Assembly (NCBI RefSeq): GCF_039654945.1
Contig: NW_027361868.1
Span: 11,842,001-11,906,000, forward strand
Reading direction: 5' to 3'
DNA: 64,000 nt
From: Dendrobates tinctorius
Taxonomy: Eukaryota
The position numbers and the translations under genes were made by a program. Shown here in pieces: positions 3 through 55,959 of the stretch (its first letter is position 1; every line of letters begins with the position of its first letter). The notes below the pieces were generated by a model that saw only the letters and a list, made by a program, of their open reading frames with translations, did not search any database and was not told the DNA's origin.

Positions 3-48
3 AAAGCGACGCGTTTCGATCGCTACATGCGATCTTTATCAAAGCTTT
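3..48 (-). ncRNA. Minimal type I hammerhead-ribozyme-like motif, U3-A8 core variant
   Basis: Minus strand AAAGC-U-UUGAUAA-A-GAUCGC-augua-GCGAUC-GAAAC-GC-GUC-GCUUU: stem I 5 bp, perfect 6-bp stem II, GUC triplet. Confidence 0.65.
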
Positions 49-368
49 GGAAATTTGAATTTCGCTTGGAGCTGGATTTTTTCTCCTTTTCTTCATGGAA
101 ATTGACCACTACAGGATGGTGTTCCACGCTCCTATTGAGTCGGTGAGCTGGCTTTATAACTTTATTTAAATTTAACAATGCAGCCTCCACCTAACAGTAT
201 TTTCCTAAGTGGCCCCCTTTTCCGATGCCACCGAGGCGAAGTAGTCCCTGCTCGCAGCATAATGGGGCTTTCACATGCCGCTTTCCTCCAAGGCCCTACA
301 GGGCTTGCGTCCAAACCTCCAGCAAAGTGGGATTCGGACGTATGCGCTGGCGGGGCCACAGACTATTA

Positions 369-1293
369 GGCTATGTGCACACGTACCGGAACTCTCGCGG
401 AAATTACCGCGAGAATTCCGGAATTCCATTCCGCGGGAAAATCGCATTTTAAATTCCCGCGATTTTCCCGCGGAAAAACTAGCATTTTGCAAGCGTAATT
501 AGCTTGCAAAATGCTAGCGTTTTCCAAGCGATCTGCAGCATCGCTTGGAGAACTGATTGACGGGTTGGTCACACTCGTCAAACATAGTGTTTGACAAGTG
601 TGACCAACTTTTTACTACTGAGGCCGCCTATGCAGCATCAGTAGTAAAAGATAAAATGTAAAAAAAAATAAAAAATGGTGTTATTCTTACCTTCCGACGT
701 CCCGCGCAGCCGTTCCCAGTAATCCTTTGCGAAAATGCCCGCGATGATGTCCGTTCTCGCGGGATCGCGACGTCTCGCAGTAATTCGCGATGACGTCTCG
801 CGAATGACTTCGCGATCCCGCGAGAACGGACGCCATCGCGGGCATTTTTGCAACGGATTACTGGGAACGAGAGCGTGGAGAGAGGCGGGAAGGCTGCGCA
901 GGACGCCGGAAGGTGAGAATAACAATATTTTTTATTTTAAATTATATTTTTTACAGGGATATGGTACCCACAGCCCGGAGGACAGTCTCCTCTCCTCCGG
1001 ACCGTGGGTACCATCCGCAAATGTTCTGCTTACTTTCCGCATGGTGTGCACAGCCACATGCGGGAAGTAAGCGGAACAATGCATTCCTATGGGTGCGGGA
1101 TCGCCGCGATTCCGCAAAATTAATGAGCATGCTGCGGTTTTTACTGCGAAGCGATTCCGCTGCGGTAAAAACCACAGCATTGCGGAATCCCATAGGAATG
1201 CATGGAATGCTTATTTTTCTCGTTTTCGTGGCAAAATCGCGCGGATAAAACCACCGCGGAAACGCGAAAAAAATGTAACGTGTGAACTCAGCC
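369..1293. mobile_element. PIF/Harbinger-like MITE
   Basis: TTA|GGCTATGTGCACACGT ... ACGTGTGAACTCAGCC|TAA; internal inverted segments; CpG-rich. Confidence 0.75.
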
Positions 1294-1392
1294 TAATGGT
1301 GCTGGCAGAGCGAACGTGCGCTCTGACGTACGAAATTTTAGGCGCATGTGCCTACCGGAGGCAGACACTCAGACGTAGTGACATTTGTTTTT

Positions 1393-1438
1393 TTCACTTG
1401 AAAAAAATCGCCGTTATGGCATTGAAACGCGTTGTGAA
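1393..1438 (+). ncRNA. Minimal hammerhead-like motif, U3-A8 variant
   Basis: UUCAC-UUGAAAA-A-AAU(c)GCC-guuau-GGCAUU-GAAAC-GC-GUU-GUGAA, overlapping AATAAA 1437-1442. Confidence 0.6.
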
Positions 1439-4323
1439 TAAAAAGCCCTTTCATCATCATCTTTTCTGAAGAATTGATTCACTCCAGCAGCGCAGCCCAC
1501 CTACGTGTTCATCCAACTTGATACAACTCATACATAGCTTATGGGCATGAATGGCGCCAGTGCCACTTCCGGACAGAAAAGAAAAAAAAAAGGAGCTGCA
1601 AGTAATAGATTATCAGAAAACCACACGTACAACTTCCTGTATGACTGAACACAGTCACAAACACAAAGCCACTGAGTACTATAGATCTGCAGAGCTGTCA
1701 ATCATCGCTCGCCGCCTCACGGATGATTGACGTCCTCACATCCCAAGAATGTATGAAGCATGAATCTGAACCGTATTTCCCAGCCTCGACCCGCTCCCGA
1801 CATCCCTTCGTCTTGGTTGGCAGTGAATGGATGTGATGGGAGAAGGTTATGATTTTGTATTCAGAATAAAATACAATGCAGCCATGATTCATAATTCAGA
1901 ATATGGGGGAGGGGTGGGACAAGTGTATAGAAGAAAGCCGCGCTTGTACGGAATGTTTACCTCGCATTTGAACATTTCCTTTTAGGACGGGATAGTATAA
2001 ACCTGGCCTCCAGCTGTTTCTTTCTTTCCCTTTAGTTTCCCCTGCAATCAAATTCAATTAAACAATCCGTACACCCTTCTCAATGGATGACAATAAAGCC
2101 AATTACGCCGCAATCACACAGTCTTTTCTGCACTTCCACTGTTCCTGCCTATTGTGCTGGGTATTTTTATTCCATGCTGGAGATTTTAACCTACACCTTC
2201 TCTGAGCGGCTCGCCGCGGGCAGTTTCACCATAGCTTAGCAACCAATCACTAACCCACGGCGGACCGCGCAAATGCTGATTCAAAACACTAGTTAGTGCC
2301 ATCCGGCCCCGGAATTAAATGTTCCTCGCTGCTGCCCATTGTACTTCTCTGCGGGCCGCTGGATTATAATGGCAGGGAAGCTGAACAAAATGAGATCCTT
2401 GCATCGGAAGGCTGAATGTGATATCCACGAGGAGGGCGATATGTCTTATTGTGAGCGATTCTTATCCTTAAGAATAGGCGCTGATCCTCAGAGTGCACCA
2501 GGGTATTATTAGAGGAATATTAATATGCCATTGAGTGCTCTTAAAGGGAACTGATCAGCAACATTTGTGATAGGATAGGGCCGTGTGCAACAATTGCAAT
2601 GACACCTTTTTCAATCATGATGCGCGCAAGTGCCCGTTACTCGAGTTTGCCTAGGGTGCTCGAGTATGGCGGGTGCTCGAGACAAGTCACATGTTCGAGT
2701 CCCAGCAAATGCATGTAACGCGGCTGTTAGACAGACACAATACATGTGGGGATTGCCTGACAAACATGGGCAAGCCCCACATGTTGGGTGCCTGTAACAG
2801 CAGCAAACATGCAGCTGCGGGGACTCGGAACATGTCACTCATCTTGAGCACCCACTGTACTCAGTGCATACTCGAGCACTTGCGCTCATCACGATCCTTT
2901 GCAGCAAAATTCATCTTTTTATCCATATGCGCTGGTGGGAGTATCGGTACACGTGCAGGCTATGGCTCCTCTTCTTACTGTCAGCTGCTTGATTGACAGT
3001 GGAGAGTTTCACTGGACAAAATCTTGCATGCGCGCCAACCAACCTATTTTTGACCAGTTCCACTAGAATAGCTACAGGGGTTGCAATCACAACCGGACCC
3101 TGGAGCCCAGGAAGGGGGACCAAAAGATCCCTTCTGTCCATATGAAAAGACTATTGCTAATAAAGGCCTGCGATAGTTTGGGAAAGTGTTGGAGATCTTG
3201 CATTGTGGCATGTGAGCTTTAATTTATGCCACCGAGTACAAGGTTAAGGATTTGGGCGGCACATAGAAGCAATTGCATAGGCTAAAATAAGAACGGCGCA
3301 TGCACGATTTTGGCAAGGAGCAGAGGTAAGGTAATAGAGCAGAGAGTTTGCCTTCACCGTTAATCAAGCATGAAAAGAGTGGAGAAAAGAGAAGAGGAGC
3401 CGTGCCTTGTAACTGTACCTGGTCGTGTGCTCCAATTCACATGCAGAGGAAAAGGAAGACGAATTACGGCGCAACCGATTTTGCCACTGCCTTATCCTGC
3501 ACTGCCTCTGCTTGTGTCATGGAAATGTTGCTGACAGGTCTTGTTTACAGGAATGCTTGCTGGGCAAACCCCTTTAACGACCTCTTTTTCTTTGATCCTA
3601 TTTTGTTTCCTTTTACAATTAAAACTTGATAAATCTATAAAGACATCTGTGTCTCAGGAGGTCAGCCATGTCCCACGTCCTCCTCACCTTCCAGCCTCCA
3701 GCTGTAGGCTGGGGCTACACGGGGACTCGTGTTACCCGACACATTTGGAATCATTTGAGACTCTGCCGCAGGTTGCAACGTGACAAAATAGGAAATCATT
3801 ATATTCAATGTTGCAACATGCCGCCAAATCGTTCTAGTTCAAAACAATGAGCTGCAGCAGGAGCCTCCCCCCTCTGCACTAAGGCAAAAGTTGCTAAGTG
3901 CTACCCCATAGCTAAGTCGGTGGGTCTGCAGACTGACACCAGGCAAAAGATGAAACTGATCAGCGCATTAACCCCTTTGTAATCTGCATAATTTCAGGAT
4001 TGTACAGAAAATTCTGCATTTCAAACTTCAATTTTAAGGTTTCGTTAGTAGAAATTTCCAAGTTTAGATTTCGTTTCCTCTCTACATTCAGATGTGGTAG
4101 GAAATGTTCACTGCTACATGTGAACATGCGCCTAAAATTAGGCTACAACGTTTTTGTAACGTTAAATGTAAATTTACTAACATATTAAATAAAAAAATAA
4201 ACTATAATATGTATAGACACACACACAGTATATTTATATATTTTGTGCATTTACAATTTTTATTAGTGGATTACTGCCAAATGTATAGGGCATTTTTGAA
4301 GGGAGCCACCAGTACATCTTAGT

Positions 4324-13400: not shown

Positions 13401-14776
13401 AAATTAGGAAAATTGAAAATGTTGCGCACTTACCAGCACGTGCTCCCAGTTTTGCATCAGGTAGATGTCAGTCTGATCCAGGACGAGGATCTCTATAGAA
13501 GAGAGAAAATCAAAATCCCTCTTTTTCTCGCCTTCGGTGCCGATGATGGTCCGCAGCCCCAGGGGAGAAGCGATGATGATGTCAGATGAGTAGAATGGAG
13601 AATACAGCCTCATGCTCTTCTGCATGACGGACACTCCTGTTGGATGGAAACCATGAGACTTAGTCTTCTGCTGATATTGAGGCAGAGGACGCTGTGATGA
13701 CATCAGTCCCGGTCCACTGTCAATATCAGAAGAGGGTCTATCACCCTTTAGTGGAACCCCTGCCACCCAATCTTAGGGAGCAGAGGAGTTGTGACGGCAG
13801 CATAGGCCCCGATGAAGGCCACCTGTGTTCACCCTCTGGCCCTATAATGGGCACTAGCCCTTGTACCAGCAGTCATTGCCCCCAATCTTACCTATCCTAA
13901 AGTGATCATCGATGTTCCCAGCGAACATGGCTTCATAGTCCTCGGGCCTTTTCAGATTGGGAGGTCTATGACCGGGGTCAGAGCCAAACTCTTTCTTGAA
14001 TCTCTTCTTGCTGCTCACTTCTATCTTTTCGCCGGACCCCTCTAGGAGGCTGATTAACAGCTGCACCACTCGCAGGGCAGATTCACGGAACGGCAAGACT
14101 ATGAGGACCTGAACAACAGATTAAAGCCGTTGGGTCGGAATAATGACATAAAGCAGCCAATGTGTTATAGGAATCTCCAAGGAAAAAAGGAAGTCCAGCT
14201 CAACGAATAAAATCCAAGATATTCTGTATTCATTTCATTAAAATACAAGTATGGCTGCTATGATCGTCATTGCAGTTTTTACCCTGGCATGGGATGATCG
14301 CACAGGGAGATGCCCAGGAGGTTCTGAACGCGTTTCGAGCGTTATGCGCTCTTAAACTCCTTGAAACGCGTCCAGAACCTCCTGGGCATCTCCCTGTGCG
14401 GTCATCCCATGCCAGGGTAAAAACCGCAATGACGATCATAGCAGCCATACTTGTATTTTAATGAAACGAATAAAGAATATCTTGCATTTCATTCCTTGAG
14501 CTGGACTTCCCTTTTTCCTTGGAGTATTTCAAGACGTCTGGGTGGAGACGTGTCCTTGCTCGGATTTTGCTGCATTATCAGTGACCAAAGGGGTGAGCTG
14601 AATCTAACCTTTTTTTCCCTTTTGCATTATAGGAATCTATATCCAGGCGTTGAAAATAAGAAACCGAAGCGTCTTATCACCAACGTCGGACATATTAGAT
14701 GGATGTTCTGCAAGGAAATCAAAAGAACAGCAGGGGGTTCCATAACAGCAATATTGAGACATAAAGAATGATTGGA

Positions 14777-34181: not shown

Positions 34182-34922
34182 GTGGCGATTCGAATTTTTA
34201 TATATTTAGCATTTTATTTACTTTGTTTTTTAATCCCCTTAGGGGACTTGAACCTTCGATCGTCTGAAAAACCGGAAACGCAAAAACAGAAAATTCAACC
34301 TTAATCCGTTAATGATCACCAATATAACTTTTTACTGGCCTGAGAAATAAGAGACTACATCCCTTATGGTTGAAAATGCAGCGAGTGACAGCTATATACT
34401 GTAACTGACATCTTACTGCATTGGCCAACGATTGGCATCACTCATGGCCATGTAACCCCCTAAATGCTGCTGTCAATAGTGATAGCAGCATCTAGTTGGT
34501 TAACAGCAGGAGTCTCCCTGTTTAACTCACACACTGTGATTGTGATGTGTGATCCCGGTGATTGCCATTGAAATTCAGGGGAATGGAATTCAAGGGGTTG
34601 TCCAATTTTTGGGGTTGTCCAACATATAGGCCCCTTAAAGGGAATCTATCACCATGAAAATGCAGACACCATGTCAAAGAGCAGGGGGAAAGAGGTAGCT
34701 TGATATAGAGTTTTATGAGAAAAGGTCCAGTATAACTTGAGTTTTTGTCATTTAACCCTCTACTCTTTCTGGGATTTTTGGTCCAGTAGGCGGTCCTATG
34801 AGTGATCGACAACTTTCTTTGTATAAGAGTGCATAGAGAGATAGCTGTCAGTCACTGATAGGACCACCCACTGGACCGAAAATGCCAGAAAGAGCGAATG
34901 ATGTATTTGTGTTATGTCTTGT

Positions 34923-34958
34923 TTGAAAAAGGCTTCGGAATTGAAGCTGAAACGAGTC
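34923..34958 (+). ncRNA. Decayed hammerhead-like motif
   Basis: UUGAAAA-A-GGCUUC-ggaauu-GAAGCU-GAAAC-GA-GUC; stem I not recognisable; AATAAA at 34989-34994. Confidence 0.45.
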
Positions 34959-37900
34959 ATTGTATTGAATGTAATGAATTATCCATGGAATAAACTCCAG
35001 AATTGAATGAAATATATGGAGATCGGCTCTCACCTATCTACTCAGCAAAATGAAAACATTTGAAAAATTATGCTGCGTAAAGTAGACACATGGGGAATGT
35101 TTTTTATTAACTTTTTCTGTCTACTATAACGATCTAGCTTAAGAATATAAACATTCAAAGTTAATCGCTAATTTGAAAAAAAATTAAATTTCCATTATTT
35201 TCATATTTTCTTTTAACAAAAAGTACAATGTGTCACAAAAAAAAGTGCAATCTCGGTATTACTGGAATATGACAAAACATTCCAGAATCCTTACCACATG
35301 AAGTGACACAAGTCGGATTTGAAAAGTTTGTCTCGGTCGCTATGAAACTAGGAAATATAAACATTTTCCCCATGCACAAAAGCATGATGTGCCGCAGACA
35401 CCACCCACACACCTGAGGTAGGAGTAGGAGAGTTGAGAAATAGAGCTATACAGCAATGATGGATTATGCACATGTTAGGGACTTGGTCCACCATTGGAAT
35501 TTATTGATTTAATTAGTGTTGGGTAGATCACATTATTCATTTTAAATAATATCTAATTAAAAGGAATCTGTTACCAGGTTTTTGCTACAACCTTCTGAAA
35601 GTAGCATGAGGTAGAGCCAGAAACCCGGATTCCAGCGATGTATCACTTACTAGTATTTTCTCTGCTGTAGATGTAGCAGTTCTCTGAATGCTGAGCTCTG
35701 TATAACCCCGCCCACAGCACTGATTGGCTGCTTACTGTGTACACCGTGCATAAGCAGAAAGCTGCCAATCAGAGATAGGGGCGGTGTTGGACTACATGGC
35801 AGCAGGTTCTTTAGTCCTTTAGTGAATAATCTCCTGCTGATAAAAAGTAATTTTATAAGAACTACAAAATGCAGCCCAGTAAGTGACACTTCGGTGGAAT
35901 CAGCGTCTCTGCTTTTATATTATGCTACTCTAAGATTTGGTAGCAAAAACCAGGTGTCAGATTCCTTTCTCGTGAATGTCTTTCGGTCTTTAGATTCTTT
36001 TACGCCTTCCCCTCTCTATAGACTTTTATAGGCAGCAACTGTAACCTGCTCCCTCAGTGAGCTGAAAGTCTGTCTGCATTAGAGACGGGTTTGAGCAGTA
36101 AGTTCAGGGGCATTGGGGAATACAACATTTTTGTTTAATAATATACACTATGATAATAAATTTAGAATAAGATATGAGAATAATAATAAAGTTTCTTATA
36201 CCCACATGTTCTATTGAATAAAAGAAAAAATGTAACTAGGGTTATTTTTTTAATGTTTTAGATGTGGCCCCATTAAGTAGTCGAAAAGAATTTAGTCATT
36301 TTTTTGTTAGGTTGGAAGTAAAACCTGCAGCTCATTAGATTCAATGCGATTTATGCTAAAAGGTGGTGAAAATATTGTGATGGCCTAAATTTACGGGAAA
36401 TTCTTTAACCCCTTAACCCCTGGAGGTATTTTCGTTTTTGCGTTTTCGTTTTTCGCTCCCCTTCTTCCCAGAGCCATAACTTTTTTATTTGTCCGTCAAT
36501 ATAGTTGTATGAGAGCTTGTTTTTTGCAGGACGAGTTGTACTCTTGAAAGACACCATTGGTTTTACCATGTCGTGTACTAGAAAACGGGAAAAAAATTCC
36601 AAATGCGGTGAATCCCACACTTATTTTTTGTTTGGCTTTTTTACTAGGTTCACTAAATGCTAAAACTGACCCGCCATTATGATTCTCCAGGTCATTATGC
36701 GTTCATAGACACCAAACATGTCTAGGTTCCTTTTTTTTATCCAAGTGGTGAAAAAAAAATTCAAACATTGTTTAAAAAAAAATAAATTTTGCGCCATTTT
36801 CCGATACCCGTAGCATCTCTATTTTTCGTGATCTGGGGTTGGGTGAGGGCTTATTTTTTGAGCGCCGAGCTGACGTTTTTAATGATACCATTTGAGGCAG
36901 ATACGATCTTTTGATCGCCCGTTATTGCATTTTAATGCAATCTCGCGGCACCCAAAAAAAAGTAATTCTTGCTTTTGACTTTGTTTCTCACTACGCCGTT
37001 TAGTGAGCAAGTTAATTCTTTTTTTATTGATAGATTGGGCGATTCTGAACGTGGTGATACCAAATATGTGTATGTGTGATTTTATTTTTATTGTTTTATT
37101 TTGAATGGGGCAAAAAGTGGGTGATTTGCACTTTTATGGGTTTTTTTACATTTTGAAAAACTTTTTTTTTTCACTTTTGGCATGCTTCAATAGCCTTCAT
37201 GGGAGACTAGAAGCTTCCGTAGCCCGATCGGCTCTGCTACATAGAGGCGATGATCAGTTTGCCTGTATGTAGTAGAATTACTCACGTGCTATGAGTGCTG
37301 ACCACCGGGTGGCGCTCACAGCAAGCCGGCACTGACAACCATAGAGGTCTTCAGGAGACCTCCGGTTGTCATGCCAACACATCAATGACCCTTGATCACG
37401 TGAGGTGGGTCACCAGTGGGCGGATTTCCAGCACGATTGTCGGAAGCACTTGTTAAATGCCGCTGTCAGCGTTTGACAGAGGCATTTAACAGGTTAATAG
37501 CCGCGGGTGGATCGCGATTCACCCCGCGACTATTCCGGGCACATGTCAGCTGTTCAAAACAAATAAGCAACTTTGTAATATATCTTATCAGAGAAATCTG
37601 CTTCTTTCTCCTCCTGGACTGAGCTTTCACTCTCACTTCATTGGTAAAATCTGTATTTAGCGTAGACTGAGAACCACATTCCTGAGATAGGAGATGACAG
37701 TTGGGGCATTCTGCTGCAAGTTCTCCTGGAAAGTTTTCTTAAGAACTTTATAAGGAACCAACTGTCATCTCCTCCTATCTCAGTAAGGCCAGAGTGACAC
37801 TATAGTCACACTAGAGAAATAAGGATGAGTGCTATGCGAGAAAAAATCGCATAGCACTCGGACCAATGTTAATCTATGGGGCAGCTCCCAGCTCCGTTTT

Positions 37901-39966: not shown

Positions 39967-42900
39967 ATGGAAGAGGCCAGGAGCCATTTGGTGAGCTGCA
40001 TTTCTTGCTACATGTTCACAGACTTACCAGTGGAAAAGCCAAACTTCACATGCCACAAATGCAAGCTTGTGTCCCTATTGGAGGAAAAGTTGCAAAATCT
40101 CGAAGAGAGGTGAGCTACATTGAAAATCATTAAGGAAGGTGAAGAGTTCTTAGAGCAGAATTATCTCTTCATGTTACAGAAAGAAGAAATTCGAAGTGCA
40201 CCTAAAGAAACAGAGGAATGGAGACATGTGACCCAGAGAAGCAGGAGGATCAGGAGGCAGTCAGCACCCATACTTCTCAGGAACCAGTACCAGGCTCTCA
40301 CGCAGGAAAACGATAAAGAAATACATCAGGACTACTTTTCCCACAAATGACAACCTTGTACACCTTCAGAGTCCTCCTGGATGGAGAAAGAAAAATGTTG
40401 TGAAGAAGAAACGGAGAGTGGTGGTCATGGGGGATTCCCTGTTGAGAGGAACAGAGGCCGCTATCTGCAGACCGGATATAACTTCAAGAGAAATGTGCTG
40501 TCTTCCAGGTGCAAAAATTAAAGATGTGTCTGACAGGATATCAGGACTCTTCAGACCTACAGATGACTACCCATTCCTGCTACTACATGTGGGGACAAAT
40601 AACACCGCAAGAAACGACCTGGAAACCATCTGCAGTGACTTTGAAATCTTAGGTAAGAAAGTAAAAGAACTGGGAGCGCAGGTGGTCTTCTCTTCCATCC
40701 TCCCAGTGGATGGCCATGGACCAAGGAGGTGGAATAAGATTCTGCAGGTGAACAACTGGCTACATCGATGGTGCCGTCAGCAACAATTTGGATTTCTGGA
40801 TCACGGAATGAATTACCTATATGATGGACAACTTGCTAGAGATGGGGTGCACCTTACGAAGACTGGAAAGCATGTATTTGGAAGTCGCCTTGCTACACTT
40901 GTAAGGAGAGCTTTAAACTAGAACAATGTGGGAAGGGAAGCAAAAGGCCAGAAAAAGCCATACACCTGACAAATGCTATTGAGAACTCTGCTATTAGAAA
41001 CGGGAGGAAAGAACAAAGACAAAAAAATCTAAATAATAAAAATATTGGAGAAAGAGAAACCAATCACAAACTAAAATGTTTCTATACTAATGCACAAAGC
41101 ATGGGCAACAAACAAGGAGAACTGGAACTACTAACACAGGAGAAGAAATATGATGTCATTGGAATCACTGAAACTTGGTGGGACAATACACATGATTGGA
41201 ATACAAGACTAGAAGGATACAACTTATTTGCAAGAAACAGACTTGATAAACGAGGAGGAGGTGTCACATTGTATGTTAGAAACGCGTATATCTGCACAGA
41301 GATTGAAGCTTCAGAGACTGGGAGTTCTGTGGAAACTGTTTGGGTAAGAATACAAGGACAGAACAATGGAAAGGACACCATTGTAGGCATTTACTACAGG
41401 CTGCCTGTGCAAGCTGAAGATATGGATGAACTCTTTATGCATCAAATGGCCAAGTTCTCCAAAAAATATGACATAGTTGTCATGGGAGATTTCAACTATC
41501 CAGACATTTGTTGGGAATCTCTCTCAGGCAAAACTAACAGGTCAAGGAAATTCTTATACTCTCTTGCTGACAACTTTATCTTGCAAAAGGTAGGGGAGAA
41601 AACAAGGGGAACTGCTACCTTGGATCTAATCCTTATAAACAGGGAGGAAATGATTGAGGAGGTAAAAGTGGCTGGGACCCTAGGAGGTAGCGACCATGCT
41701 ATTTTAGAATTTTGGATAACTAGAGGAGGAAGACCTGTGAAGACTCAGAAGTCAAGGTTAGATTTCAGAAAGGCAGATTTTAAAGGATTCAGAAAGAGAA
41801 TTGGAGGGATCCAATGGTTGGATATCCTTAAAGACAAAAATGTCCAGGAAGGATGGGAAATCTTGAAAAATGAAATGCTCAAAGCATAATTGTTAACAAT
41901 TCCGAAAAAAGGGAAGAATAGGAAGCGTTTAAGGAAACCAGGATGGATGAACACAGAACTGAAGCACATGTTAAAAAGGAAGAAAGAAATGTTTATAAAA
42001 TGGAAAGAGGGAGGCATATCTAAAGAAGAATATAATGCTGTCTGCAGAACCTGCAGGGCACGAATCAGATTATCTAAAGCTGACAATGAATTGAGGCTTG
42101 CAAGAGACGTCAAAAGCAATAATAAAGGATTTTGGGGATATGTCAAAAGTAAAAGAAAAGTCAAAGATGCTATAGGATTTTTACAGGATGAAAATGATGA
42201 AATGGTAATTCCTATTTTGCATCTGTTTTCTCTCAGAAAGGAAATGTAACATCAACTATTCTTCACTGTCCTATTAAGGGAATAGAAGAATCCAGGATAT
42301 CTATAAACAGAAATATAGTGAGGAAACACTTAGCTAACCTAAATGAATTCAAGTCTCCGGGTCCAGATGAATTACACCCCAGAGTACTGAAGGAGATAGC
42401 AGAAGAAATTTTTGAACCGCTCTCCATAATCTTTGAAAATTCGTGGAGAACAGGAGAAGTCCCAGAAGACTGGAGAAGAGCAAATGTTGTTCCTATCTTC
42501 AAAAAGGGGAAGAAGGTGGACCCAGGCAACTATAGGCCGGTGAGTCTGACTTCTATACCAGGAAAGATCTTTGAACAAATTATTAAACAACATGTGTGTC
42601 AGTACCTGGATAAGAATGAAGTGATTAAACAGAGTCAGCATGGGTTTGTAACTAATAAGTCATGTCAGACTAACTTAATTTCCTTCTATAATGGAATCAC
42701 TGATTGGGAGGATCAGGGAAATGCTGTAGATATAGTATATCTTGACTTCAGCAAAGCATTTGACAAAGTATCTCACACAAGCCTTATTGAAAAAATGACT
42801 AAGTATGGAATGGACAAGGCAACTGTTAGGTAGATTCATAACTGGCTTAGTGATTGGACCCAAAGAGTGGTCGTAAATGGCTGCACATCCAGTTGGAAGA

Positions 42901-43738
42901 ATGTCTCAAGTGGGGTACCACAGGGCTCTGTCCTGGGCCCTGTAGTGTTCAACATCTTTATCAACGATTTAGATGAAGGAATTGAGGGTAAACTGATTAA
43001 ATTTGCTGATGACACAAAGCTAAGAGGGATAGATAATACTAGAGAAGAGAGAGAGAGAAGATTCAAAAATATATAAATAAACTGGAGCAGTGGGCAGCAA
43101 CTAACAGAATGGTTTTTAACAGGGAAAAATGCAAAGTACTACATCTGGGCAATAAAAATGAAAAAAGCATATACAGAATGGGAGGAATAGGGCTAAGCAA
43201 CAGCACATGTGAAAAAGACATGGGTATATTAATAGATCACAGACTGAATGAGTCAACAGTGTGATGCAGCAGCAAAAAAGGCAAATGCAATTCTAGGATG
43301 TATTAACAGAAGCATACAGTCTAGATCACGTGAAGTCATTATTGACCTCTACTCCTCTTTGGTCAGACCTCATCTGGAATGCTGTGTCCAGTTTTGGGGG
43401 CCACATTTTAAAAAATACATCAACAAACTGGAGCAAGTTCAGAAAAGAGCGACCAGAATGGTGACCGATCTGCAAACCCTGTCTTATGAGGAAAGGTTGC
43501 AGGATTTGGGAATGTTTAGCTTGCAAAAGAGGACTGAGAGGAGACTTAATAACTGTCTACAAATATCTCAAGGGCTGTCACATTGCAGAAGGATCATCTT
43601 TATTCTCATTTGCACAAGGAAAGACTAGAAGCAACGAGATGAAACTGAATGGGAGGAGACACAGATTAGATATTAGAAAAAACTTTTTGACAGTTAGAGT
43701 GATCAATGAGTGGAACAGGCTGCCACGAGAGATAGAAG
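39967..43738 (+). mobile_element. Near full-length CR1 LINE, 5' part (ORF1 zinc finger + SGNH/GDSL esterase; ORF2 APE endonuclease + RT), inactivated
   Basis: CxxC..CxxC after ATG 39967; VVVMGDSLLRG, LLHVGTNN, DGVHL; YTNAQS, GITETWW, MGDFNYPDI, GSDH; [38 protein letters not shown]; several stops and frameshifts; resumes at 49564. Confidence 0.95.
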
Positions 43739-44557
43739 TGTTGTGAGCTCATCTGTTCATTCACCTTTTGTGTCCGAGGATCTCCCTCTTCTGGTGAAGG
43801 AAGGTAGTGAGGCTGATTTGGATGAAAGAAACCAAACACCTGATCAGGTGGATTGTGACTGGGTAACGGGAACTTCAGACTGGATATAAGGCAGCCGACA
43901 CCCTTCTGAGTGGCTGGTGATTTCTCTGCTGGATTCTTGGAGACCAGTCTGATTCCTGCTTCCCAAATATAAGTTTTTGCTCTGCTATTGAACTTATTAG
44001 TTTTGGTTTTGTTTACCTTGTTTTTTGAGTTCAGCCATCCCCGGCCGGGGGTGTGCTGGATTCTTATTCCTTGATCAGTGTTCTCTTTTGCTCTGCTTTC
44101 AGAATATTCTGAGTGCTGATATAGGGTTTGAAGTCTAGTGACTTCAGGGTCCTTTTTGCTTATCAGCTGTGTTGGTAATATTTTTAGCAGGGTTTTCTCG
44201 GATTGCAGACAGCAGCTTTTCTGTCCTGTCCTTTTTAGTTAGCTTGGGCTCCATCGTTTGCTCAACCTTTCTATCTGTGTTAGTGTTTTCATCTTATTTC
44301 ACCGTCATTATATGTTGGGGGATGCCTATTGCTTTGGGGTCTGCTCTGGGGCAGTCAGTTTTTCCCTTTTCTCTCTTTAGGCTTATTTAGATCTCCGGCT
44401 GTGACGAGGTGTCTAGGATCACTGTAGGAACACTCCACGGCTACTACTAGTTGTGTGATAGGATTAGGGGTCTGCAATCCGCTAGTTTCCAACCTCTCTG
44501 ATTTTCTCGGCTGAGCTTGTGTTTTGTTTTTTCCTCCTCGGTGACTCAATCATAACA
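43739..44557 (+). repeat. 5' LTR (819 bp)
   Basis: TGTTGTGAG...ATCATAACA; TATAA at 43885-43889; direct repeat of 48749-49563 with roughly 15 substitutions and a few small indels counted by eye. Confidence 0.95.
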
Positions 44558-44698
44558 GAATCAACAGCCATACCGCAGATTCTAGGGTACTCAAAAGCAG
44601 GAAAGAATTGTTAAAAAAAAAAGTGTCAGAATTTTTTTTTGTGTATATTTTTTCCACTTTTTCTCTGAGGCCGTAGGAGAAATATATATTTTTTTCTG

Positions 44699-47600
44699 AT
44701 GGAGTTTAAGCAATTGTCTGATCGTGTGGAGCAGCTTGCTGCTGAAGTGCGAGGAATTTCCGCCTATCTTGCTCATTCACACACTGCTGAACCAAAAATT
44801 CCCACTCCTGATGTGTTTTTTGGGGATCGGTCTAAATTTTTGAATTTTAAGAATAATTGTAAATTATTTCTTCCCTTGAAGCCTAACTCATCGGGGAGCT
44901 CTGCGCAGCAGGTTAAAATTGTCATCTCCTTGCTGCGCGGCGATCCCCAGGATTGGGCGTTTTCTTTAGTACCAGATGATCCTATTCTAACTAATGTGGA
45001 CGCATTTTTTCAGGCCTTGGGGTTGTTGTATGATGAACCTAATGCGATTGATCAAGCTGAAAAGACCCTGTTGGCATTGAGCCAGGGTCAAAATTCTGCA
45101 GAACTGTACTGTCAAAAATTCCAAAAGTGGGCGGTCCTCACCACTTGCAATGATGGTGCCTTGGCAGCGCTCTTTCGGAAGGGTTTGTCAGAAGCCGTAA
45201 AGGATACTATGGTGGGATTTCCTGCTCCCTCTGGTCTTGACGATTCTGTCATTAGCCATTCAAGTTGATCGGCGTTTACGTGAACGTAAAATTACACTGG
45301 AAATGCTGCCACCTGTTGAACAAATGTCTGAACCTATGCAATGTGATAGAGTTTTGTATAGGGCGCAACGTCAGGAGTTTAGAAGGCGTAATAAGCTATG
45401 TTTTTTCTGTTGAGATGCCTCTCATACTATTTCTGTCTGCCCTAAACGAGAGAAACGTTTTGCACACACATTTGCTGTAGGTGGTGTACAACCTAAGTTT
45501 CTTCTGGCAATTACTCTGATCTGCTCCCTGTCCACATTTTCTGCTAAAGCCTTTGTGGATTCAGGAGCGGCCTTGCACCTAATGGATTTAGATTTTGCTA
45601 AACGTTGGGGTTTCCCTATGACACCCCTGCGGATGCCTATTCCTTTGAGGAGTATTGATGCTACTCCTTTGGCGAAGAATAAATCTCAATTTTGGACCCA
45701 GGTGGTAATGCGGGTCTCCCCAGACCATCAAGAAAATTGCAGATTTTTGGTGTTGCATAATTTGCATGATACCATCGTGCTGGGGTTCCCCTGGTTGCAA
45801 ATCCATAATCCAGTTTTGGATTGGAAATGTGTCTGTGGTGTGTTGGGGTTGTCGGTGTGCTCTTACTGACTCTCCTGTTTTCTCCACCTCTCCCCAGTCG
45901 CATGAGGTTCCTGACTATTTGGCTGATTTTTATGATGTGTTTAGTGAGAGTAAGTCTGCGTCTTTGCCTCCTCATAGGAGTTATGACTGTGCAACTGAGC
46001 TGAGTCCGGGGTGTAAATTTCCCAAGGGTCGACTTTTTAATTTATCTGTACCCGAACATGAGGCTATGCGTTCTTATATTAAGGAGTCATTGGAGAAGGG
46101 TCATATTAGACCATCCTCTTCACCCTTGGGTGCTGGGTTTTTTTTGTGGCCAAGAAGGATGGTTCATTAAGGCCCTGTGTTGACTATCACTCCCTTAACA
46201 AAATTACTGTTAAATATCAGTATCTGTTACCCCTGATTTCTGACCTATTTTCTAGAGTTGAAGGTGCTTGCTGGTTTACCAAGCTTGACCTCAGGGGGGC
46301 GTATAATCTTATTCGCATTAAGCATGGGGATGAATGGAAGACAGCGTTTAATATTCCGGAGGGACATTTTGAGTACCTGGTGATGCCTTTTGGGCTCACT
46401 AACGCCCCTTCTGTCTTCCAGTGCTTCATGAATGATATTTTCCGGGACTTTGTGGATAAGTTTCTGATCATCTATTTGGATGATATTTTGATCTTTTCCA
46501 GGGATTGGAACTCTCATGTGGAACATGTTCGGACTGTGTTCCGGATTTTGAGGGAAAACTCCCTGTATGTTAAGGGATCGAAATGTCTTTTTGGTGTACA
46601 GAGGATTTCATTTTTGGGATTTATTTTGTCTCCGTCAACTATTGAAATGGACCCGGCCAAGGTACAGGCCATTTATGATTGGGTGCAGCCCACTTCTTTG
46701 AAGGCTCTCCAGAAGTTTTTGGGTTTTGCTAATTTGTATCGTAAGTTTATAGCCAATTTTTCTGTTATTGCCAAACCATTAACTGATTTGACTAAGAAGG
46801 GCGCTGATTTGCTGAATTGGTCTCCAGAGGCTGTTTCTTCTTTTCAGGAGCTGAAGCGGAGGTTCACTTCTTCTCCGGTTTTGCAACAACCCGATGTCTC
46901 ACTTCCATTTCAGGTGGAGGTGGATGCTTCAGAGACTGGTGCAGGAGCTGTTTTGTCCCAAAAAGATCCTGTAACATCTAAAATGAACCCCTGTGCCATC
47001 TTTTCCCGAAAGTTCTCTCCTTCGGAACGCAACTATGATGTGGGGAATCGAGAACTGTTGGCCATGAAGTGGGCATTTGAGGAGTGGAGACATTGGTTGG
47101 AGGGAGCTAGACATCAAGTTGTGGTCCTCACTGACCACAAGAATTTGATCTACCTTGAGTCGGCTAAACGCTTGAATCCGAGACAGGCCAGGTGGGCATT
47201 GTTTTTCACACGTTTTGATTTTGTGGTCTCCTTTCTTCCGGGCACTAAGAACGTTAAGGCTGATGCCCTCTCTAGGAGTTTTTAGGCTGATTCTCCTATT
47301 GTGACAAAGCCTGCTACCATCTTACGTGAGGGGGTGGTTCTTTCTGCCATCTCGCCTGATTTGAGACGTGCTCTGGAGAAGTTTCAGGAGGATAAGCCTG
47401 AGCGTTGTCCCAGTGGTAGGTTGTATGTTCCTGACCAGTGTAGGAGGAAAGTGATGTCTGAGGTTCATTGCTCCGCGTTGGCTGGTCATCCAGGTATTTT
47501 TGGTACTAGAGATTTGGTGAGTCGGTCTTTTTGGTGGCCTGCTTTGTCTCGTGATGTCAGAAATTTTGTGCAGTCCTGTGGGACTTGCTCCCGATCTAAG

Positions 47601-48899
47601 CCTTGTTCTCGTTCTAGTGGGTTGTTGATGCCTTTGCCGGTGCCCAGGAGGCCATGGACCCATATTTCAATGGATTTTATTTCTGATCTGCCTGTCTCTC
47701 AGAGGATGACTGTTATCTGGGTGATTTGTGATAGATTCTCTAAGATGGTTCATCTTGTACCACTCCCTAAGTTGCCATCTTCCTCAGAGTTGGTGCCCTT
47801 GTTTTTGCAACAGGTGGTTCGCTTGCACGGGATTCCAGAGAACATTGTATCGGACAGAGGAGTTCAGTTTGTCTCTAGATTCTGGAGGATCTTTTGTTCC
47901 AAGTTGGGAATTCAGTTGTCCTTCTCCTCTGCATTTCACCCTCAGACCAATGGGCAGACGGAGAGAACAAACCAGACTTTGGAGGCTTATTTGAGATGTT
48001 TTATATCTGCTGATCAGGATGATTGGGTCTCATTTTTACCCTTGGCCGAATTTGCTTTAAATAATAGAGCTAGTTCTGTCACTTTGATGTCACCCTTTTT
48101 CTGTAACTTTGGGTTTCATCCTCGATTTTCTTCAGGGCAGGTGGAGTCTTCTGCCTGTCCAGGGGTTGACACTGTGGTGGAAAGAATGCAGCAGATTTGG
48201 GACCAAGTGGTGGATAAGTTGTCTCTTTCCCAGGAAAAGGCCCAGCGGTTTTCTAACCGGCATAGGACCATTGGTCCCCGGTTTAAGGTGGGTGATATGG
48301 TCTGGTTGTCATCAAAGAATATCTCTATGAAAGTGGCTTCTCCAAAGTTTAAACTTAGATTTTTTGGACCTTACAAGATTTTGGAAATTATTAATCCGGT
48401 CTCTTTTCGGTTGGCTCTTCCTGTCACATTTAAGATTCATAATGTGTTTCATAAGTCCTTGTTGAAGAGGCTTGTTGAACCAGTGGTTCCTATGGCGGCA
48501 CCTCCTGACCCTGTGTTGGTTGAAGGTAACATGGAATATGAGGTAGAGAAGATACTGGATTCCCGTCTGGCTAGACGGAGACTCCAGTATTTGGTTAAGT
48601 GGAAGGGTTATGGTCAGGAGGATAATTCCTGGGTCTCTGCCTCTGATATTCATGCTGAAAGATTGGTGCGTGCTTTTCATCGGGCTCATCCTGATCGGCC
48701 TGGTGGCTTGGATGAGGGTTCGGTGACCCCTCCTCAAGGGGGAGGTACTGTTGTGAGCTCATCTGTTCATTCACCTTTTGTGTCCGAGGATCTCCCTCGT
48801 CTGGTGAAGGAAGGTAGTGAGGCTGATTTGGATGAAAGAAACCAAACACCTGATCAGGTGGATTGTGACTGGGTAACGGGAACTTCAGACTGGATATAA
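44699..48899 (+). pseudogene. Disrupted gag-pol of the Gypsy element (Gag, CCHC knuckle, aspartic protease, RT, RNase H, integrase, chromodomain)
   Basis: PDVFFGDRSKF/LRGDPQDWA gag; CFFC*DASHTISVC; VDSGA; [28 protein letters not shown]; VDASETG, TDHKNL; HPG..C..C, SMDFI, SDRGVQF, HPQTNGQTER, GPY; YEVEKILDSR..QYLVKWKGY..NSW. Frameshifts and an in-frame TAG at 47283-47285. Confidence 0.94.
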
Positions 48900-49563
48900 G
48901 GCAGCCGACACCCTTCTGAGTGGCTGGTGATTTCTCTGCTGGATTCTAGGAGACCAGTATGATTCCTGCTTCCCAAAGATAAGTTTTTGCTCTGCTATTG
49001 AACTTATTAGTTTTGGTTTTGTTTACCTTGTTTTTTGAGTTCAGCCATCCCCAGCTGGCGGTGTGCTGGATTCTTATTCCTTGATCAGTGTTCTCTTTTG
49101 CTCTGCTTTCAGAATATTCTGAGTGCTGATATAGGGTTTGAAGTCTAGTGACTTCAGGGTCCTTTTTGCTTATCAGTTGTGTTGGTAATATTTTTAGCAG
49201 GGTTTTTCCTCGGATTGCAGACAGCAGCTTTTCTGTCCTGTCCTTTTTAGTTAGCTTGGGCCCCATCGTTTGCTCAACCTATCTTTATATCTGTGTTAGT
49301 GTTTTCATCGTCATTATATGTTGGGGGCTGCCTATTGCTTTGGGGTCTGCTCTGGGGCAGTCAGTTTTTCCCTTTTCTCTCTTTAGGCTTATTTAGATCT
49401 CCGGCTGTGACAAGGTGTCTAGGATCACCGTAGGAACACTCCACGGCTACTATTAGTTGTGTGATAGGATTAGGGGTCTGCAATCCGCTAGTTTCCAACC
49501 TCTCTGATTTTCTGGGCTGAGCTTGTGTTTTGTTTTTTCCTCCTCGGTGACTCAATCATAACA
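48749..49563 (+). repeat. 3' LTR (815 bp)
   Basis: Direct repeat of the 5' LTR; TATAA at 48895-48899. Confidence 0.95.
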
Positions 49564-53610: not shown

Positions 53611-53902
53611 TGTACAGTGCTAACCACTGAGCCAGTGTCCTGCCCACTGTACAGTGCTAACCAATGAGCCAATGTGCTGCCCACTGTACAGTGCTAACCA
53701 CTGAGCCAATGTCCTGCCCACTGTACAGTGCTAACCACTGAGCCAATGTGCTGCCCACTGTACAGTGCTAACCACTGAGCCAAAGTCCTGCCCACTGTAC
53801 AGTGCTAACCACTGAGCCAATGTGCTGCCCACTGTACAGTGCTAACCACTGAGCCAATGTGCTGCCCACTGTACAGTGCTAACCACTGAGCCAATGTGCT
53901 GC
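53577..53902. repeat. 37-bp minisatellite (~9 copies) derived from the SINE 5' head
   Basis: Unit ACAGTGCTAACCACTGAGCCAATGTGCTGCCCACTGT. Confidence 0.95.
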
Positions 53903-55253
53903 ATACTGACTTTATATGTATTAATTATGATGCATTATTATCTGTTACCACTTGATAGTTCTGATGTAGAAGTGTTGAAGGGAAGGTTATATCAAGAAGC
54001 TGCTTGCAGCAAGTGAATTGGAGGCAGACATCCCCAGTTGCCAAGGAGAGAAAAGAACAAGGCTGGAGGGAGATAGTGGTGCTGAAAAAAAGGGTCCGAC
54101 AAAGGGGAGCCTCAAAGGAGACTGGAAAGAGAACTAAATCTGCAGAGAGAGATATGTTTGCAACAAAGTGGCGCAACAGACCCCAACCCAGCCACTTTGG
54201 AACTTAACATCAATTACGTGAGGTCATGGTACATGATGGCCCCACCATGCCTGGTCAGAGCAATTGAGTGATGGACCTTGGCATAGATGTAAGTTTTGTG
54301 GCACTGTATAGCTGTGCCACAATGCTGTTGGAAAGGGACAATGTGAAGTTGTTAAAAACAGTTTTGGCACCAGAGGTTAGAAGCGGAGTGCTGTCTTATC
54401 ATGTGAAGTGGCTGGAGCACCGATTGTTGGCCTATGTAGTCGTTGGGTCTGGGCTTGTCTATAGTCTTAGCGTTATTGAGCTGGATGCTGGAACAAGAGT
54501 GCCTGTGTAAAAGCTGGGTGGTTGGTCAACTGCTTGTGAAGTGCCAGAGCAGTACGGTGCAACAAGATCCATGTAATGTCATTGAGAAGTAGGTGAAGAG
54601 TCGGGTGGTAGAATGTGTGTCTCGTCTGTGTGACATCTCATTCAGATTGTTGTCTATGCTAAGAGTCTGTGTGGACTGTTGATAACTTTTGTTCGGTAGT
54701 ACTCTGTGAGTTGTGTATGAGCTTCAGTTGTGTGGCAAACCATAGTGATGTCAGAGTGGACTGCAGGGGTGTAACTGTAATGAGTGTGGGGGTTGCAATC
54801 ACACCCAGGCCCTGGAGCCCGGGGGTGGGGTCCCAAAGGGTCCTCTTGGCCCATATGAGAAGACCAATGCTATTAAAGATGTTGACTTTGATAGCTGAGA
54901 GTCTTGTCGTAGACCTTGCATTAGGGTCCCCAATTTTTAAGTTACGACACTGGTGGAGTATGTGAAAAAAGGAGCAAGTGGCCTTCACATTGTTAGTCTT
55001 ATGGTCTGAATGTGTTGCTATCCTTTCAGCGAGTGGACTGGCTAAGAATGATGGGACATGATAACTGGATCCCTGTAAAAGTGGGGTTAAAGAAGAAACC
55101 CTTCTCTTGTGTACAGAGTAAGTACAACTAGTGTTCTGTATGTAGCAAGGTCTGTTGATATTGTGCTTTGGCGGGTTAGTCACCCCGTGTATAGTACTGT
55201 TATACGGGTACTGAATTAAAAGTTATTTAAGAATTGCTATATTATTCAACTTA

Positions 55254-55396
55254 CAGTGGGAAAGAAAGTATTTAGTCAGCCACCAATTGTGCAAGTTCTC
55301 CCACTTAAAAAGATGACAGAGGCCTGTAATTGACATCGTAGGTAGATCACAACTATGAGAGTCAAAATGAGAAAACAAATTCAGAAAATCACCTTG
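55254..55396. mobile_element. Isolated TIR fragment of a Tc1 related to the 10440..12049 element
   Basis: TA|CAGTGGGAAAGAAAGTATTTAGTCAG...GTGCAAGTT...CACTTAAAAAGATGA aligns by eye with 10440-10585. Confidence 0.85.
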
Positions 55397-55704
55397 TACT
55401 ATTTAAAGATAACATTTGAAAGGTGATCTGATCTTTAGCTACAGGCTCCAGTGCCGGGTCCCAGCAGGTCCAGTTTGTGCCCAACACAAGAAAGTGTTCC
55501 CTGTTTCAGCATTTGATCAGAGTTGTGTATGAGCCCCCTTCTCTGTCTGTTCATCAGCTGTGACTATGTAACGGGCTGACTTAGGAAATGAAATTAGTAT
55601 TGTGCCATGTCGTGACTTGGTGCAGACACATAAAAGAAAGGCTGACAGCACTCACTAAGTATGAACGCCCGCTCTCGATCGAAGGAACCCACTTGAAGAA
55701 GTAG

Positions 55705-55959
55705 CAACAGTCAGGGTAAATGAGATCAGTGTCCAATCTAGATGTAGAAATTCAAATGCAAAGGAACTTTATTCCGCCATATGAAGCATACAGAGCATAC
55801 AACGTTTTGACCTCCAGCAGGTCTTTGTCAAGTAGATACTTGACAAAGACCTGGTGGAGTCGAAATGTTGTATGCTCTGTATGCTTCATATGGCGGAATA
55901 AAGTTCCTTTGAATTTCTACACCTGGATTGGACGCTGTTCTCATTTACCCTGAATGTTG
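55705..55959. mobile_element. Fold-back element with back-to-back hammerhead-like motifs (Penelope-like, non-autonomous)
   Basis: ~125-bp inverted arms centred near 55835; each arm reads (A)UAC-UUGACAA-A-GAC(C)..(G)GUC-[G/A]AAA[C/U]-GUU-GUAU followed by AATAAA. Confidence 0.7.

What the first reader, a model, noticed from the sequence alone, without database searches (positions are those of the whole stretch)
3..55873. Dispersed family of variant minimal hammerhead-ribozyme motifs marking small non-coding Penelope-like elements
Seen: five loci (3-48 minus, 1393-1438 plus, ~14323-14372 both strands and partial, 34923-34958 plus, 55797-55873 both strands) share one architecture: [stem I]-UUGAnAA-A-[stem II hairpin]-GAAAC-(GC)-GUH-[stem I']. 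The stem II sequences are unrelated (GAUCGC/GCGAUC, AAUcGCC/GGCAUU, GAGCG/CGCUC, GGCUUC/GAAGCU, GACC/GGUC) yet each pairs, and stem I also co-varies (AAAGC/GCUUU, UUCAC/GUGAA, AUAC/GUAU). Stem III is reduced to a palindrome (ACGCGU or AACGUU). An AATAAA usually follows, and several of the host sequences end in GGTGAGCTG or GTGCTG plus a T-tract. Established: the hammerhead core is CUGAnGA...GAAA...NUH with a C3-G8 pair, and Penelope-like elements and retrozymes carry minimal type I hammerheads thought to cleave as dimers through palindromic stem III. Inference: UUGAnAA is the compensatory U3-A8 form, and these are several distinct families of short ORF-less ribozyme retroelements at roughly one per 13 kb, which a canonical-core search would miss.
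Basis: partly seen in the sequence, partly recalled or inferred. Interest (0 to 1): 0.85.

Follow-up and report, generated by a model that had tools for sequence, protein, structure and literature searches.

The report
Variant hammerhead ribozymes in Penelope fragments
The window really does hold several short, non-coding retrotransposon fragments of the Penelope type. Each carries a minimal hammerhead ribozyme motif with a swapped (U3-A8) core pair, but this motif and its link to Penelope elements were already published, so these are new examples of a known thing.

Summary
Observation confirmed. A structural descriptor finds complete motifs only with the U3/A8 core: 2 strict hits, 3 with a 2-bp stem I, and 4 when one core mismatch or a 1-nt bulge is allowed. 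The other 15 N3/N8 combinations, canonical C3/G8 included, give 0. Shuffled windows give 0.04-0.12.

L1 and L2 are intact. L5 has two copies, each with its own damaging change. L3 has two 5'-truncated copies. L4 is weak.

L3 and L5 are fold-back insertions flanked by target-site duplications, with one unpaired tail, as described for Penelope-like elements (PLEs). L1 is an inversion junction of the same type. L1 and L2 belong to repeat families of tens to hundreds of copies.

Natural U3-A8 covariation was reported in 2011. In 2014 the PLE minimal hammerhead was described with this core, the extra nucleotide after A9, a palindromic helix III and about 9,000 dispersed motifs in Xenopus. Vertebrate HHR repeats were tied to PLE ends in 2026.

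It is undecided whether these are separate ORF-less families or terminal by-products of autonomous PLEs. Cleavage could not be tested because only contigs were available, no raw reads. This scan had already noted U3-A8 hammerheads on other DNA of this genome (25 notes).

The parts
3..48 (-). L1: complete U3-A8 minimal hammerhead motif. Stem I is at 48-44 and 7-3, with a bulged U at 43. The core UUGAUAA is at 42-36 and the extra A at 35. Stem II is at 34-29 and 23-18. GAAA is at 17-14 and CGCG at 13-10. UC is at 9-8, so the predicted cut lies between 8 and 7. The rest of this inverted copy runs off the left edge of the window.
49..185 (+). L1 partner: a 5'-truncated 3' module of a related element in the opposite orientation, with TTGAATTTC...GGAGCTGGA and GGTGAGCTG at 142-150. 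The right end is approximate, taken from the drop in repeat depth after about 180.
   Evidence: similar to the L3 right arm, z 3.4
1379..1527 (+). L2 repeat unit (about 148 nt) as delimited by paralogous contigs. It may extend upstream, because 301-365 plus 1294-1378 is also repeated about 20-fold.
   Evidence: pieces start at 1378-1388 and end at 1522-1527, about 86% identity
1393..1438 (+). L2: complete U3-A8 minimal hammerhead motif with a perfect 5-bp stem I. Stem II has a bulged C at 1409, and one letter at 1408/1409 is left out in about a third of the paralogous contigs. The AACGCGUU palindrome is present. The predicted cut follows U1433.
14165..14176 (.). L3 target-site duplication, left copy (TTATAGGAATCT)
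14177..14339 (-). L3 left (inverted) arm. Its 5' end keeps hammerhead stem II (GAGCG/CGCUC) plus GAAACGCGUU (14356-14324). It lacks an intact core and the 5' strand of stem I.
14360..14626 (+). L3 right arm. It keeps only GAAACGCGUC (14363-14372) of the motif. It runs 103 nt further than the left arm as an unpaired tail, ending GGTGAGCTG (14592-14600) followed by T-rich sequence.
14627..14638 (.). L3 target-site duplication, right copy
34921..34960 (+). L4: motif-like copy, probably decayed. The U3-A8 core, the extra A, a 6-bp stem II and GAAAC are present. Helix III is ACGAGU and stem I has 2 bp. No target duplication or repeat family was found.
55607..55622 (.). L5 target-site duplication, left copy (16 bp, 1 mismatch to the right copy)
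55623..55835 (-). L5 left (inverted) arm with 96 nt (55623-55718) that have no partner in the right arm. The motif at 55834-55798 has AAAA in place of GAAA.
55836..55953 (+). L5 right arm. The motif at 55836-55873 has helix III AUGU and a 1-nt loss in the 3' strand of stem II.
55954..55969 (.). L5 target-site duplication, right copy

Best explanation
The five loci are old, short, non-coding insertions made by Penelope-like-element (PLE) machinery in a frog genome. Each carries the PLE minimal type-I hammerhead in its U3-A8 core form.

Shown:
- The motif architecture, and its enrichment over shuffles and over all other core pairs.
- Unrelated but pairing stems in different families.
- Fold-back or inverted structure with one unpaired tail and 12-16 bp target duplications.
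- Membership of L1 and L2 in repeat families.

Inferred:
- The pieces are the hammerhead-bearing terminal part of PLE transcripts. PLE reverse transcriptase initiates internally, 90-270 nt downstream of the hammerhead cut site, and copies back to about the 5' edge of the motif.
- Where both target strands primed synthesis, or the cDNA snapped back, two copies meet head to head at the motif. This gives the palindromes at L3 and L5 and the junction at L1.
- As RNA, the motif could cleave only as a dimer through the palindromic ACGCGU/ACGU helix III, with U3-A8 replacing the C3-G8 pair isosterically.
- In this window only L1 and L2 still have an intact motif. As isolated monomers they are probably inert.
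For: - Descriptor, 16-core control and shuffles.
- Sequence readings.
- Predicted folds: monomers form stems I and II. L1 and L2 homodimers gain about 6 and 9 kcal/mol through an intermolecular ACGCGU helix.
- Target duplications, arm identities (90.7% and 92.5%) and unpaired tails.
- Shared downstream block (GAAUAAAG...UUGAAUUUC...GGAGCUGGA...GGUGAGCUG) among L1, L3 and L5.
- Repeat families: a 5'-to-3' rise in depth across L2, and one letter at 1408/1409 of L2 (the bulged C is 1409) left out in about a third of the paralogous contigs covering it.
- Literature. PMC4209133 describes min-HHRs in PLE pLTRs with U3-A8 covariation, an extra nucleotide between 9 and 10.1, palindromic 15.2-16.2, mostly single dispersed motifs taken as truncated PLEs, dual motifs on opposite strands, and about 9,000 motifs in Xenopus tropicalis. 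PMC8557442 describes an inverted 5'-truncated copy at the 5' end and a tail at one end. PMC11167929 shows internal RT initiation at two sites with both target strands cut and extended. PMC3088659 reports that U3-A8 is natural and active in vitro.
Against: - No autonomous PLE ORF lies in the window, so the link to a coding partner rests on architecture and literature, not on sequence identity to a full element.
- The unpaired tails are 96-103 nt, longer than the 30-40 bp described for PLE tails.
- No target duplication was found for L2 or L4.
- L2 and L4 share no significant flank similarity with the others.
- There is no RNA evidence. The contigs of runs guessed to be RNA (not shown to be) barely cover L1 and L2, and contigs cannot show RNA ends.
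- L1 has a bulged U next to the core. L2 has A-U and L4 has G-U in place of the usual G10.1-C11.1.
Confidence: 0.72

Rival explanations
1. The loci belong to several dedicated ORF-less, retrozyme-like families. These have their own unit-length (about 150-450 nt) RNAs, processed by the hammerhead from tandem or circular forms and mobilised in trans by PLE enzymes.
For: - All eight longest paralogous contigs of the L2 family start at 1378-1388 and end at 1522-1527, which suggests a defined unit of about 148 nt.
- The 12 nt just upstream of that unit (1367-1378) match its last 12 nt (1516-1527) at 10 of 12 positions, as a slightly more-than-unit copy of a circular or tandem template would (sequence; my own inspection).
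- In three inversion junctions, the 5' ends of the copies coincide with the edge of the hammerhead.
- bioRxiv 10.64898/2026.07.22.740005 reports dispersed monomers of HHR repeats in all seven amphibians sampled and relates them to PLE pLTRs.
Against: - No tandem copy of any of these units occurs in the window.
- The depth gradient across L2 (about 20x upstream, 50x at the motif, 180x downstream) looks like ordinary 5' truncation of a longer element.
- The same architecture is produced by autonomous PLEs (PMC8557442).
- The 10-of-12 match is weak evidence.
Confidence: 0.25
2. The conserved motif is kept for a reason other than RNA self-cleavage. It could be a structured recognition or stop element for the PLE reverse transcriptase. 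Alternatively, its hairpin and palindrome could let two cDNA ends pair or snap back at the DNA level, which would explain why inversion points sit at the motif.
For: - The inversion point lies within or a few nucleotides from the 5' edge of the motif in L1, L3 and L5.
- Metazoan min-HHRs cleave poorly in vitro (PMC4209133).
- Catalytic mutants of the anole PLE hammerhead do not affect insertion in vitro, and no RNA-seq reads end at its cut site (PMC11167929).
Against: - The letters that are kept are exactly the hammerhead catalytic ones (U4 G5 A6, A9, G12 A13 A14, A15.1-U16.1, H17).
- Positions 3 and 8 occur only as the paired U/A combination. That points to selection on the ribozyme fold rather than on a generic hairpin.
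- Only three junctions were seen.
Confidence: 0.12
3. The motif matches are chance products of an A/T-rich core pattern and abundant hairpins or palindromes in a repeat-rich genome.
For: - The core UUGAnAA is low in information and A/U-rich.
- The window holds many unrelated fold-backs.
- L4 alone is within reach of chance, with 0.12 expected per window at its stringency.
Against: - 0.04 hits are expected against 2 strict hits, and 4 to 5 with relaxed rules.
- The other core pairs give no hits.
- GAAACGCGT is concentrated in the loci.
- The loci have repeat-family membership and target duplications.
Confidence: 0.03

Closest known systems
Minimal hammerhead ribozymes of Penelope-like elements (min-HHR; Cervera & De la Pena 2014, PMC4209133), including the U3-A8 core variant found in Schistosoma mansoni Cercyon-related copies
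   Same: - Type-I topology and the same catalytic boxes.
- U3-A8 in place of C3-G8.
- One extra nucleotide between A9 and 10.1.
- A long (4-6 bp) helix II and a short helix I.
- Helix III reduced to a palindrome, so that only a dimer can form it.
- Mostly single dispersed motifs, some as pairs on opposite strands.
- Very variable stems between families.
   Different: - The published U3-A8 set is from a trematode, whereas these copies are in a frog.
- In this window the U3-A8 form is the only one present.
- G10.1-C11.1 is kept in only 3 of 5 families.
- L1 has a bulged U between helix I and the core.
PLE insertion architecture (Craig et al. 2021, PMC8557442; Frangieh et al. 2024, PMC11167929)
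   Same: Heavy 5' truncation, an inverted 5'-truncated copy joined head to head, an extension (tail) at only one end, and a hammerhead near the 3' end of the inserted unit.
   Different: - The tails here are 96-103 nt rather than 30-40 bp.
- No ORF or pLTR tandem is present.
- The inversion point sits at the hammerhead itself in three of three junctions.
Animal non-LTR retrozymes (Cervera & de la Pena 2020, PMC7229834; Li, Clavereau & Pollet 2026, bioRxiv 10.64898/2026.07.22.740005)
   Same: Short non-coding units carrying a type-I hammerhead that needs a dimer in amphibians. They are related to PLE pLTRs, and their monomers are dispersed along chromosomes.
   Different: Retrozymes are defined by tandem repeats with canonical HHRs and circular RNAs. 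Here there are no tandems, no RNA evidence, and a min-HHR with a variant core.
Natural U3-A8 hammerhead core variants (Perreault et al. 2011, PMC3088659)
   Same: The same compensatory exchange of the C3-G8 core pair, which that paper states to be active in vitro.
   Different: Those examples are full three-helix hammerheads from various genomes, not PLE minimal motifs.

Membership tests
PLE minimal hammerhead (min-HHR) | Catalytic boxes: N3-U-G-A-N-N8-A with N3/N8 able to pair (C-G or U-A), G12-A13-A14, the A15.1-U16.1 pair, and H17 not G | tested here: met
   L1, L2, L4 and the L5 plus arm have all boxes with U3/A8. The L5 minus arm has A12. The L3 copies are truncated.
PLE minimal hammerhead (min-HHR) | One nucleotide inserted between A9 and 10.1 | tested here: met
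   There is an extra A in L1, L2, L4 and both L5 copies.
PLE minimal hammerhead (min-HHR) | Helix III absent or palindromic (15.2-16.2 and loop 3), so the fold is competent only as a dimer | tested here: met
   ACGCGU is present in L1, L2 and both L3 copies, and ACGU in the L5 minus arm. L4 (ACGAGU) and the L5 plus arm (AUGU) each have one mismatch. Predicted homodimers of L1 and L2 use this helix.
PLE minimal hammerhead (min-HHR) | Conserved G10.1-C11.1 pair | tested here: inconclusive
   G-C in L1, L3 and L5. A-U in L2 and G-U in L4.
PLE minimal hammerhead (min-HHR) | Compensatory variation of helices I and II between and within families | tested here: met
   Five unrelated stem II sequences and three unrelated stem I sequences all pair. 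Within the L2 family, one letter at 1408/1409 (the bulged C is 1409) is left out in many copies. Formal covariation statistics are not possible with this few sequences.
PLE minimal hammerhead (min-HHR) | Self-cleavage 3' of H17 | not testable with these tools
   Only assembled contigs were available, with no raw RNA reads.
Penelope-like element insertion | Inverted 5'-truncated copy joined head to head, a tail at one end only, and a target-site duplication | tested here: met
   L3 has a 12-bp duplication, arms 90.7% identical and a 103-nt tail. L5 has a 16-bp duplication with 1 mismatch, arms 92.5% identical and 96 unpaired nt in the longer arm. L1 is an inversion junction.
Penelope-like element insertion | Sequence continuity with an element encoding RT and a GIY-YIG endonuclease | tested here: not met
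   No such ORF was found among the 20 largest ORFs of the window. The RVT_1 hits belong to a CR1-like LINE and a Ty3/gypsy element. The rest of the genome could not be searched.
Non-LTR retrozyme | Tandem repeats with a complete hammerhead in at least two consecutive units | tested here: not met
   There are no tandem copies of any of the host sequences in the window.
Rfam hammerhead families | Match to a hammerhead covariance model | tested here: not met
   No hammerhead hit at gathering score or at E<=10. This is expected for a motif without helix III and with a variant core.

The most novel reading that the evidence does not exclude
In this frog lineage the U3-A8 pair may have replaced C3-G8 as the standard core across several otherwise unrelated PLE families. 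In addition, the motif may systematically mark the 5' boundary and inversion point of the short insertions. That would mean the hammerhead region helps to define or join cDNA ends during PLE integration, through its hairpin and palindrome or through an RNA end next to it, rather than acting only as an RNA-processing ribozyme.
Probability: 0.15. Interest if true: 0.55.

Novelty: new member of a known kind. Interest (0 to 1): 0.25.

Why it matters
The practical point holds. Surveys that use canonical CUGANGA cores or the Rfam models will not see these copies. In this window that means all of them, so hammerhead and PLE-fragment counts in frog genomes may be substantial underestimates. The exclusive pairing of U3 with A8, with no single-change forms among the 16 combinations, is a neat natural confirmation of the C3-G8 tertiary pair. 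Beyond that, the loci are ordinary decayed retroelement fragments.

Tried and rejected
- Rfam at gathering score and at E<=10 gave no hammerhead hit, only spurious microRNA-like hits on the palindromes.
- blastn of each locus against the window found no cross-matches between loci at E<=1e-3.
- Smith-Waterman comparison with shuffles gave only weak similarity among the L1, L3 and L5 flanks, and none for L2 or L4.
- A covariance model was not built. MAFFT put the L1 core out of register with L2 and L4, alignments cannot be edited, and six sequences would give no usable covariation statistics.
- RNA test of cleavage: every run offered was kept as contigs, which cannot show RNA ends. The contigs of runs guessed to be RNA hardly cover L1 or L2. 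This says nothing about expression.
- The other large fold-backs in the window (33906-34186 and 61793-62292) were checked for an apical hammerhead and have none.
- A search for target duplications around L2 and L4 gave nothing convincing.
- No full-length PLE of this genome could be fetched, because the window encodes no PLE protein to use as a query.
Full report
**What is there**

- **L1** (minus strand, 48->3) is AAAGC-U-UUGAUAA-A-GAUCGC-AUGUA-GCGAUC-GAAA-CGCG-UC-GCUUU.
- **L2** (plus, 1393-1438) is UUCAC-UUGAAAA-A-AAUcGCC-GUUAU-GGCAUU-GAAA-CGCG-UU-GUGAA. It has a perfect 5-bp stem I and one bulged C in stem II.
- **L4** (34921-34960) has the core, the extra A, a 6-bp stem II and GAAAC. Its stem I is only 2 bp and its helix III (ACGAGU) is not palindromic.
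- **L5** carries one motif on each arm of a palindrome. The plus arm has GAAAUGUU and has lost one letter of the 3' strand of stem II. The minus arm has AAAACGUU, so G12 is changed.
- **L3** carries two truncated motifs. The minus arm keeps stem II and GAAACGCGUU. The plus arm keeps only GAAACGCGUC.

**Is it more than chance?**

I wrote a descriptor with these requirements: N3-UGA-N-N8-A, an optional extra nucleotide, stem II of at least 4 bp, GAAA, an even palindromic spacer, UH, and stem I of at least 3 bp. I ran it with all 16 N3/N8 pairs.

- Only U3/A8 gave hits: 2 strict, or 3 with a 2-bp stem I.
- Canonical C3/G8 and the 14 other pairs gave none.
- 300 dinucleotide-preserving shuffles gave means of 0.04 and 0.12, and none of them reached the observed count.
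- Allowing one core mismatch or a 1-nt bulge recovered L1 and the second L5 copy and nothing else.
- GAAACGCGT occurs five times in the window, four of them in these loci.
- Rfam finds no hammerhead, even at E<=10.

The absence of U3/G8 or C3/A8 forms argues against two independent decay mutations and for a paired change.

**Fold**

ViennaRNA folds the L1 and L2 monomers into stems I and II. Their homodimers gain about 6 and 9 kcal/mol by forming an intermolecular ACGCGU helix with exchanged stem I strands, which is the classical double-hammerhead topology.

**Host sequences**

L3 is a 450-bp insertion (14177-14626) between 12-bp target duplications (TTATAGGAATCT). L5 is a 331-bp insertion (55623-55953) between 16-bp duplications with one mismatch.

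Both are fold-backs, with arms 90.7% and 92.5% identical. One arm is longer: 103 unpaired nt in L3 and 96 nt in L5. The longer arm ends in GGTGAGCTG or GTGAGTGCTG followed by T-rich sequence.

L1 is the same kind of junction. A complete inverted motif abuts a 5'-truncated 3' module in the other orientation. That module resembles the L3 arm (z 3.4 against shuffles) and ends with GGTGAGCTG at 142-150.

In all three junctions the inversion point lies inside the motif or a few nucleotides from its 5' edge. Two other large fold-backs in the window have no hammerhead.

**Repeat families**

Contigs from public runs were laid at 80% likeness. They show the following.

- Positions 366-1293 are a very high-copy element that inserted later. 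An empty-site joint is seen in the same species and in a related one. L1 and L2 were therefore originally about 415 nt apart, on opposite strands.
- L2 belongs to a family whose longest contigs cover 1378/1388 to 1522/1527 at about 86% identity.
- Depth across L2 rises from about 20-fold upstream, to about 50-fold over the motif, to about 180-fold downstream. This is what 5'-truncated retroelement copies produce.
- One letter at 1408/1409 of L2 (the bulged C is 1409) is left out in roughly a third of the contigs covering it. Those copies would then have a perfect 6-bp stem II.
- L1 lies in a family of roughly 40-150 copies.
- The flank-to-element junctions of L2 are present in the related species, so that insertion is old.

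**Coding partners**

The 20 largest ORFs include no PLE RT or GIY-YIG endonuclease. The reverse transcriptases belong to a CR1-like LINE and a Ty3/gypsy element.

**Comparison with what is known**

- Perreault et al. 2011 (PMC3088659) report that C3 and G8 covary to U3 and A8 in natural hammerheads, and that such cores were already known to be active in vitro.
- Cervera & De la Pena 2014 (PMC4209133) define the PLE min-HHR. They report a U3-A8 covariant with about 1,300 hits in Schistosoma, a conserved nucleotide between 9 and 10.1, palindromic 15.2-16.2, and extreme stem variability with compensatory changes. Most motifs are single and are taken as truncated PLEs, some occur as pairs on opposite strands, and there are about 9,000 min-HHRs in Xenopus tropicalis. 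Self-cleavage is low and seen only for dimers.
- Craig et al. 2021 (PMC8557442) describe the inverted 5'-truncated copy and the one-sided tail.
- Frangieh et al. 2024 (PMC11167929) show that a PLE enzyme cuts and extends both target strands and starts reverse transcription at two internal RNA sites about 100 nt downstream of the hammerhead. They also show that hammerhead catalysis is not needed for insertion in vitro.
- Li, Clavereau & Pollet 2026 (bioRxiv 10.64898/2026.07.22.740005) relate vertebrate hammerhead repeats and their dispersed monomers to PLE pLTRs.

**Most likely mechanism (inferred)**

PLE reverse transcriptase starts at its internal site downstream of the hammerhead and copies back to about the motif. 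Priming from both target strands, or snap-back of the cDNA, would give the head-to-head pairs. The result is short, ORF-less, hammerhead-bearing insertions. They may be by-products of autonomous PLEs or trans-mobilised short RNAs. The data here lean to the former but cannot decide.

Only L1 and L2 keep an intact motif. Both are isolated monomers of a dimer-dependent ribozyme, so they are probably inactive where they lie.

**What the scan had already noted**

The scan's notes list 25 other notes on U3-A8 hammerheads, and many PLE palindromes, on other DNA of this genome. They describe the genome as a poison-frog genome. I treated these as leads. I re-tested only the three that concern this window: the L3 duplication, the two different changes in L5, and the L1 junction. 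All three hold.

**Verdict**

These are new members of a known kind.

Noticed in passing
window 366-1293: A 928-bp very high-copy element. It has terminal inverted repeats (TTAGGCT...CACAC) and an apparent TTA/TAA target duplication, so it looks like a Harbinger-type MITE with internal palindromes. It is inserted between L1 and L2. Contigs joining 365 directly to 1294 occur in a run of the same species and in a related species, so the insertion is young and possibly still polymorphic.
   Followed up: partly
window 1367-1378 and 1516-1527: The 12 nt just upstream of the L2 repeat unit match the unit's last 12 nt at 10 of 12 positions (ACTCAGACGTAG versus ACTCATACATAG). This could be a trace of a more-than-unit-length copy from a tandem or circular template, a decayed target duplication, or chance.
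   Followed up: partly
window 55699-55718 and 55954-55965: The part of the L5 target duplication next to the short arm (ATGTTGTGACTT) resembles the sequence at the same position inside the long arm (CTGTTGCTACTT). This may reflect microhomology between the target and the RNA at the site where reverse transcription began.
   Followed up: no
window 21234-22199 (+): An intact-looking single-exon ORF of 321 aa with TBCC_N and TBCC domains (tubulin-folding cofactor C).
   Followed up: no
window 40400-43628 (+) and 43739-49563: A CR1-like LINE remnant (GDSL esterase, endonuclease, RVT_1) is followed by a Ty3/gypsy element. Its long terminal repeats are 98-99% identical and 5 kb apart, and it has RT, RNase H, integrase and chromodomain ORFs.
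   Followed up: no
window 14627-15214 (-): An ORF with a UTP25 NTPase-like domain (probably an exon around 14815-15020). The L3 fold-back insertion lies directly beside it, presumably in the adjoining intron.
   Followed up: no
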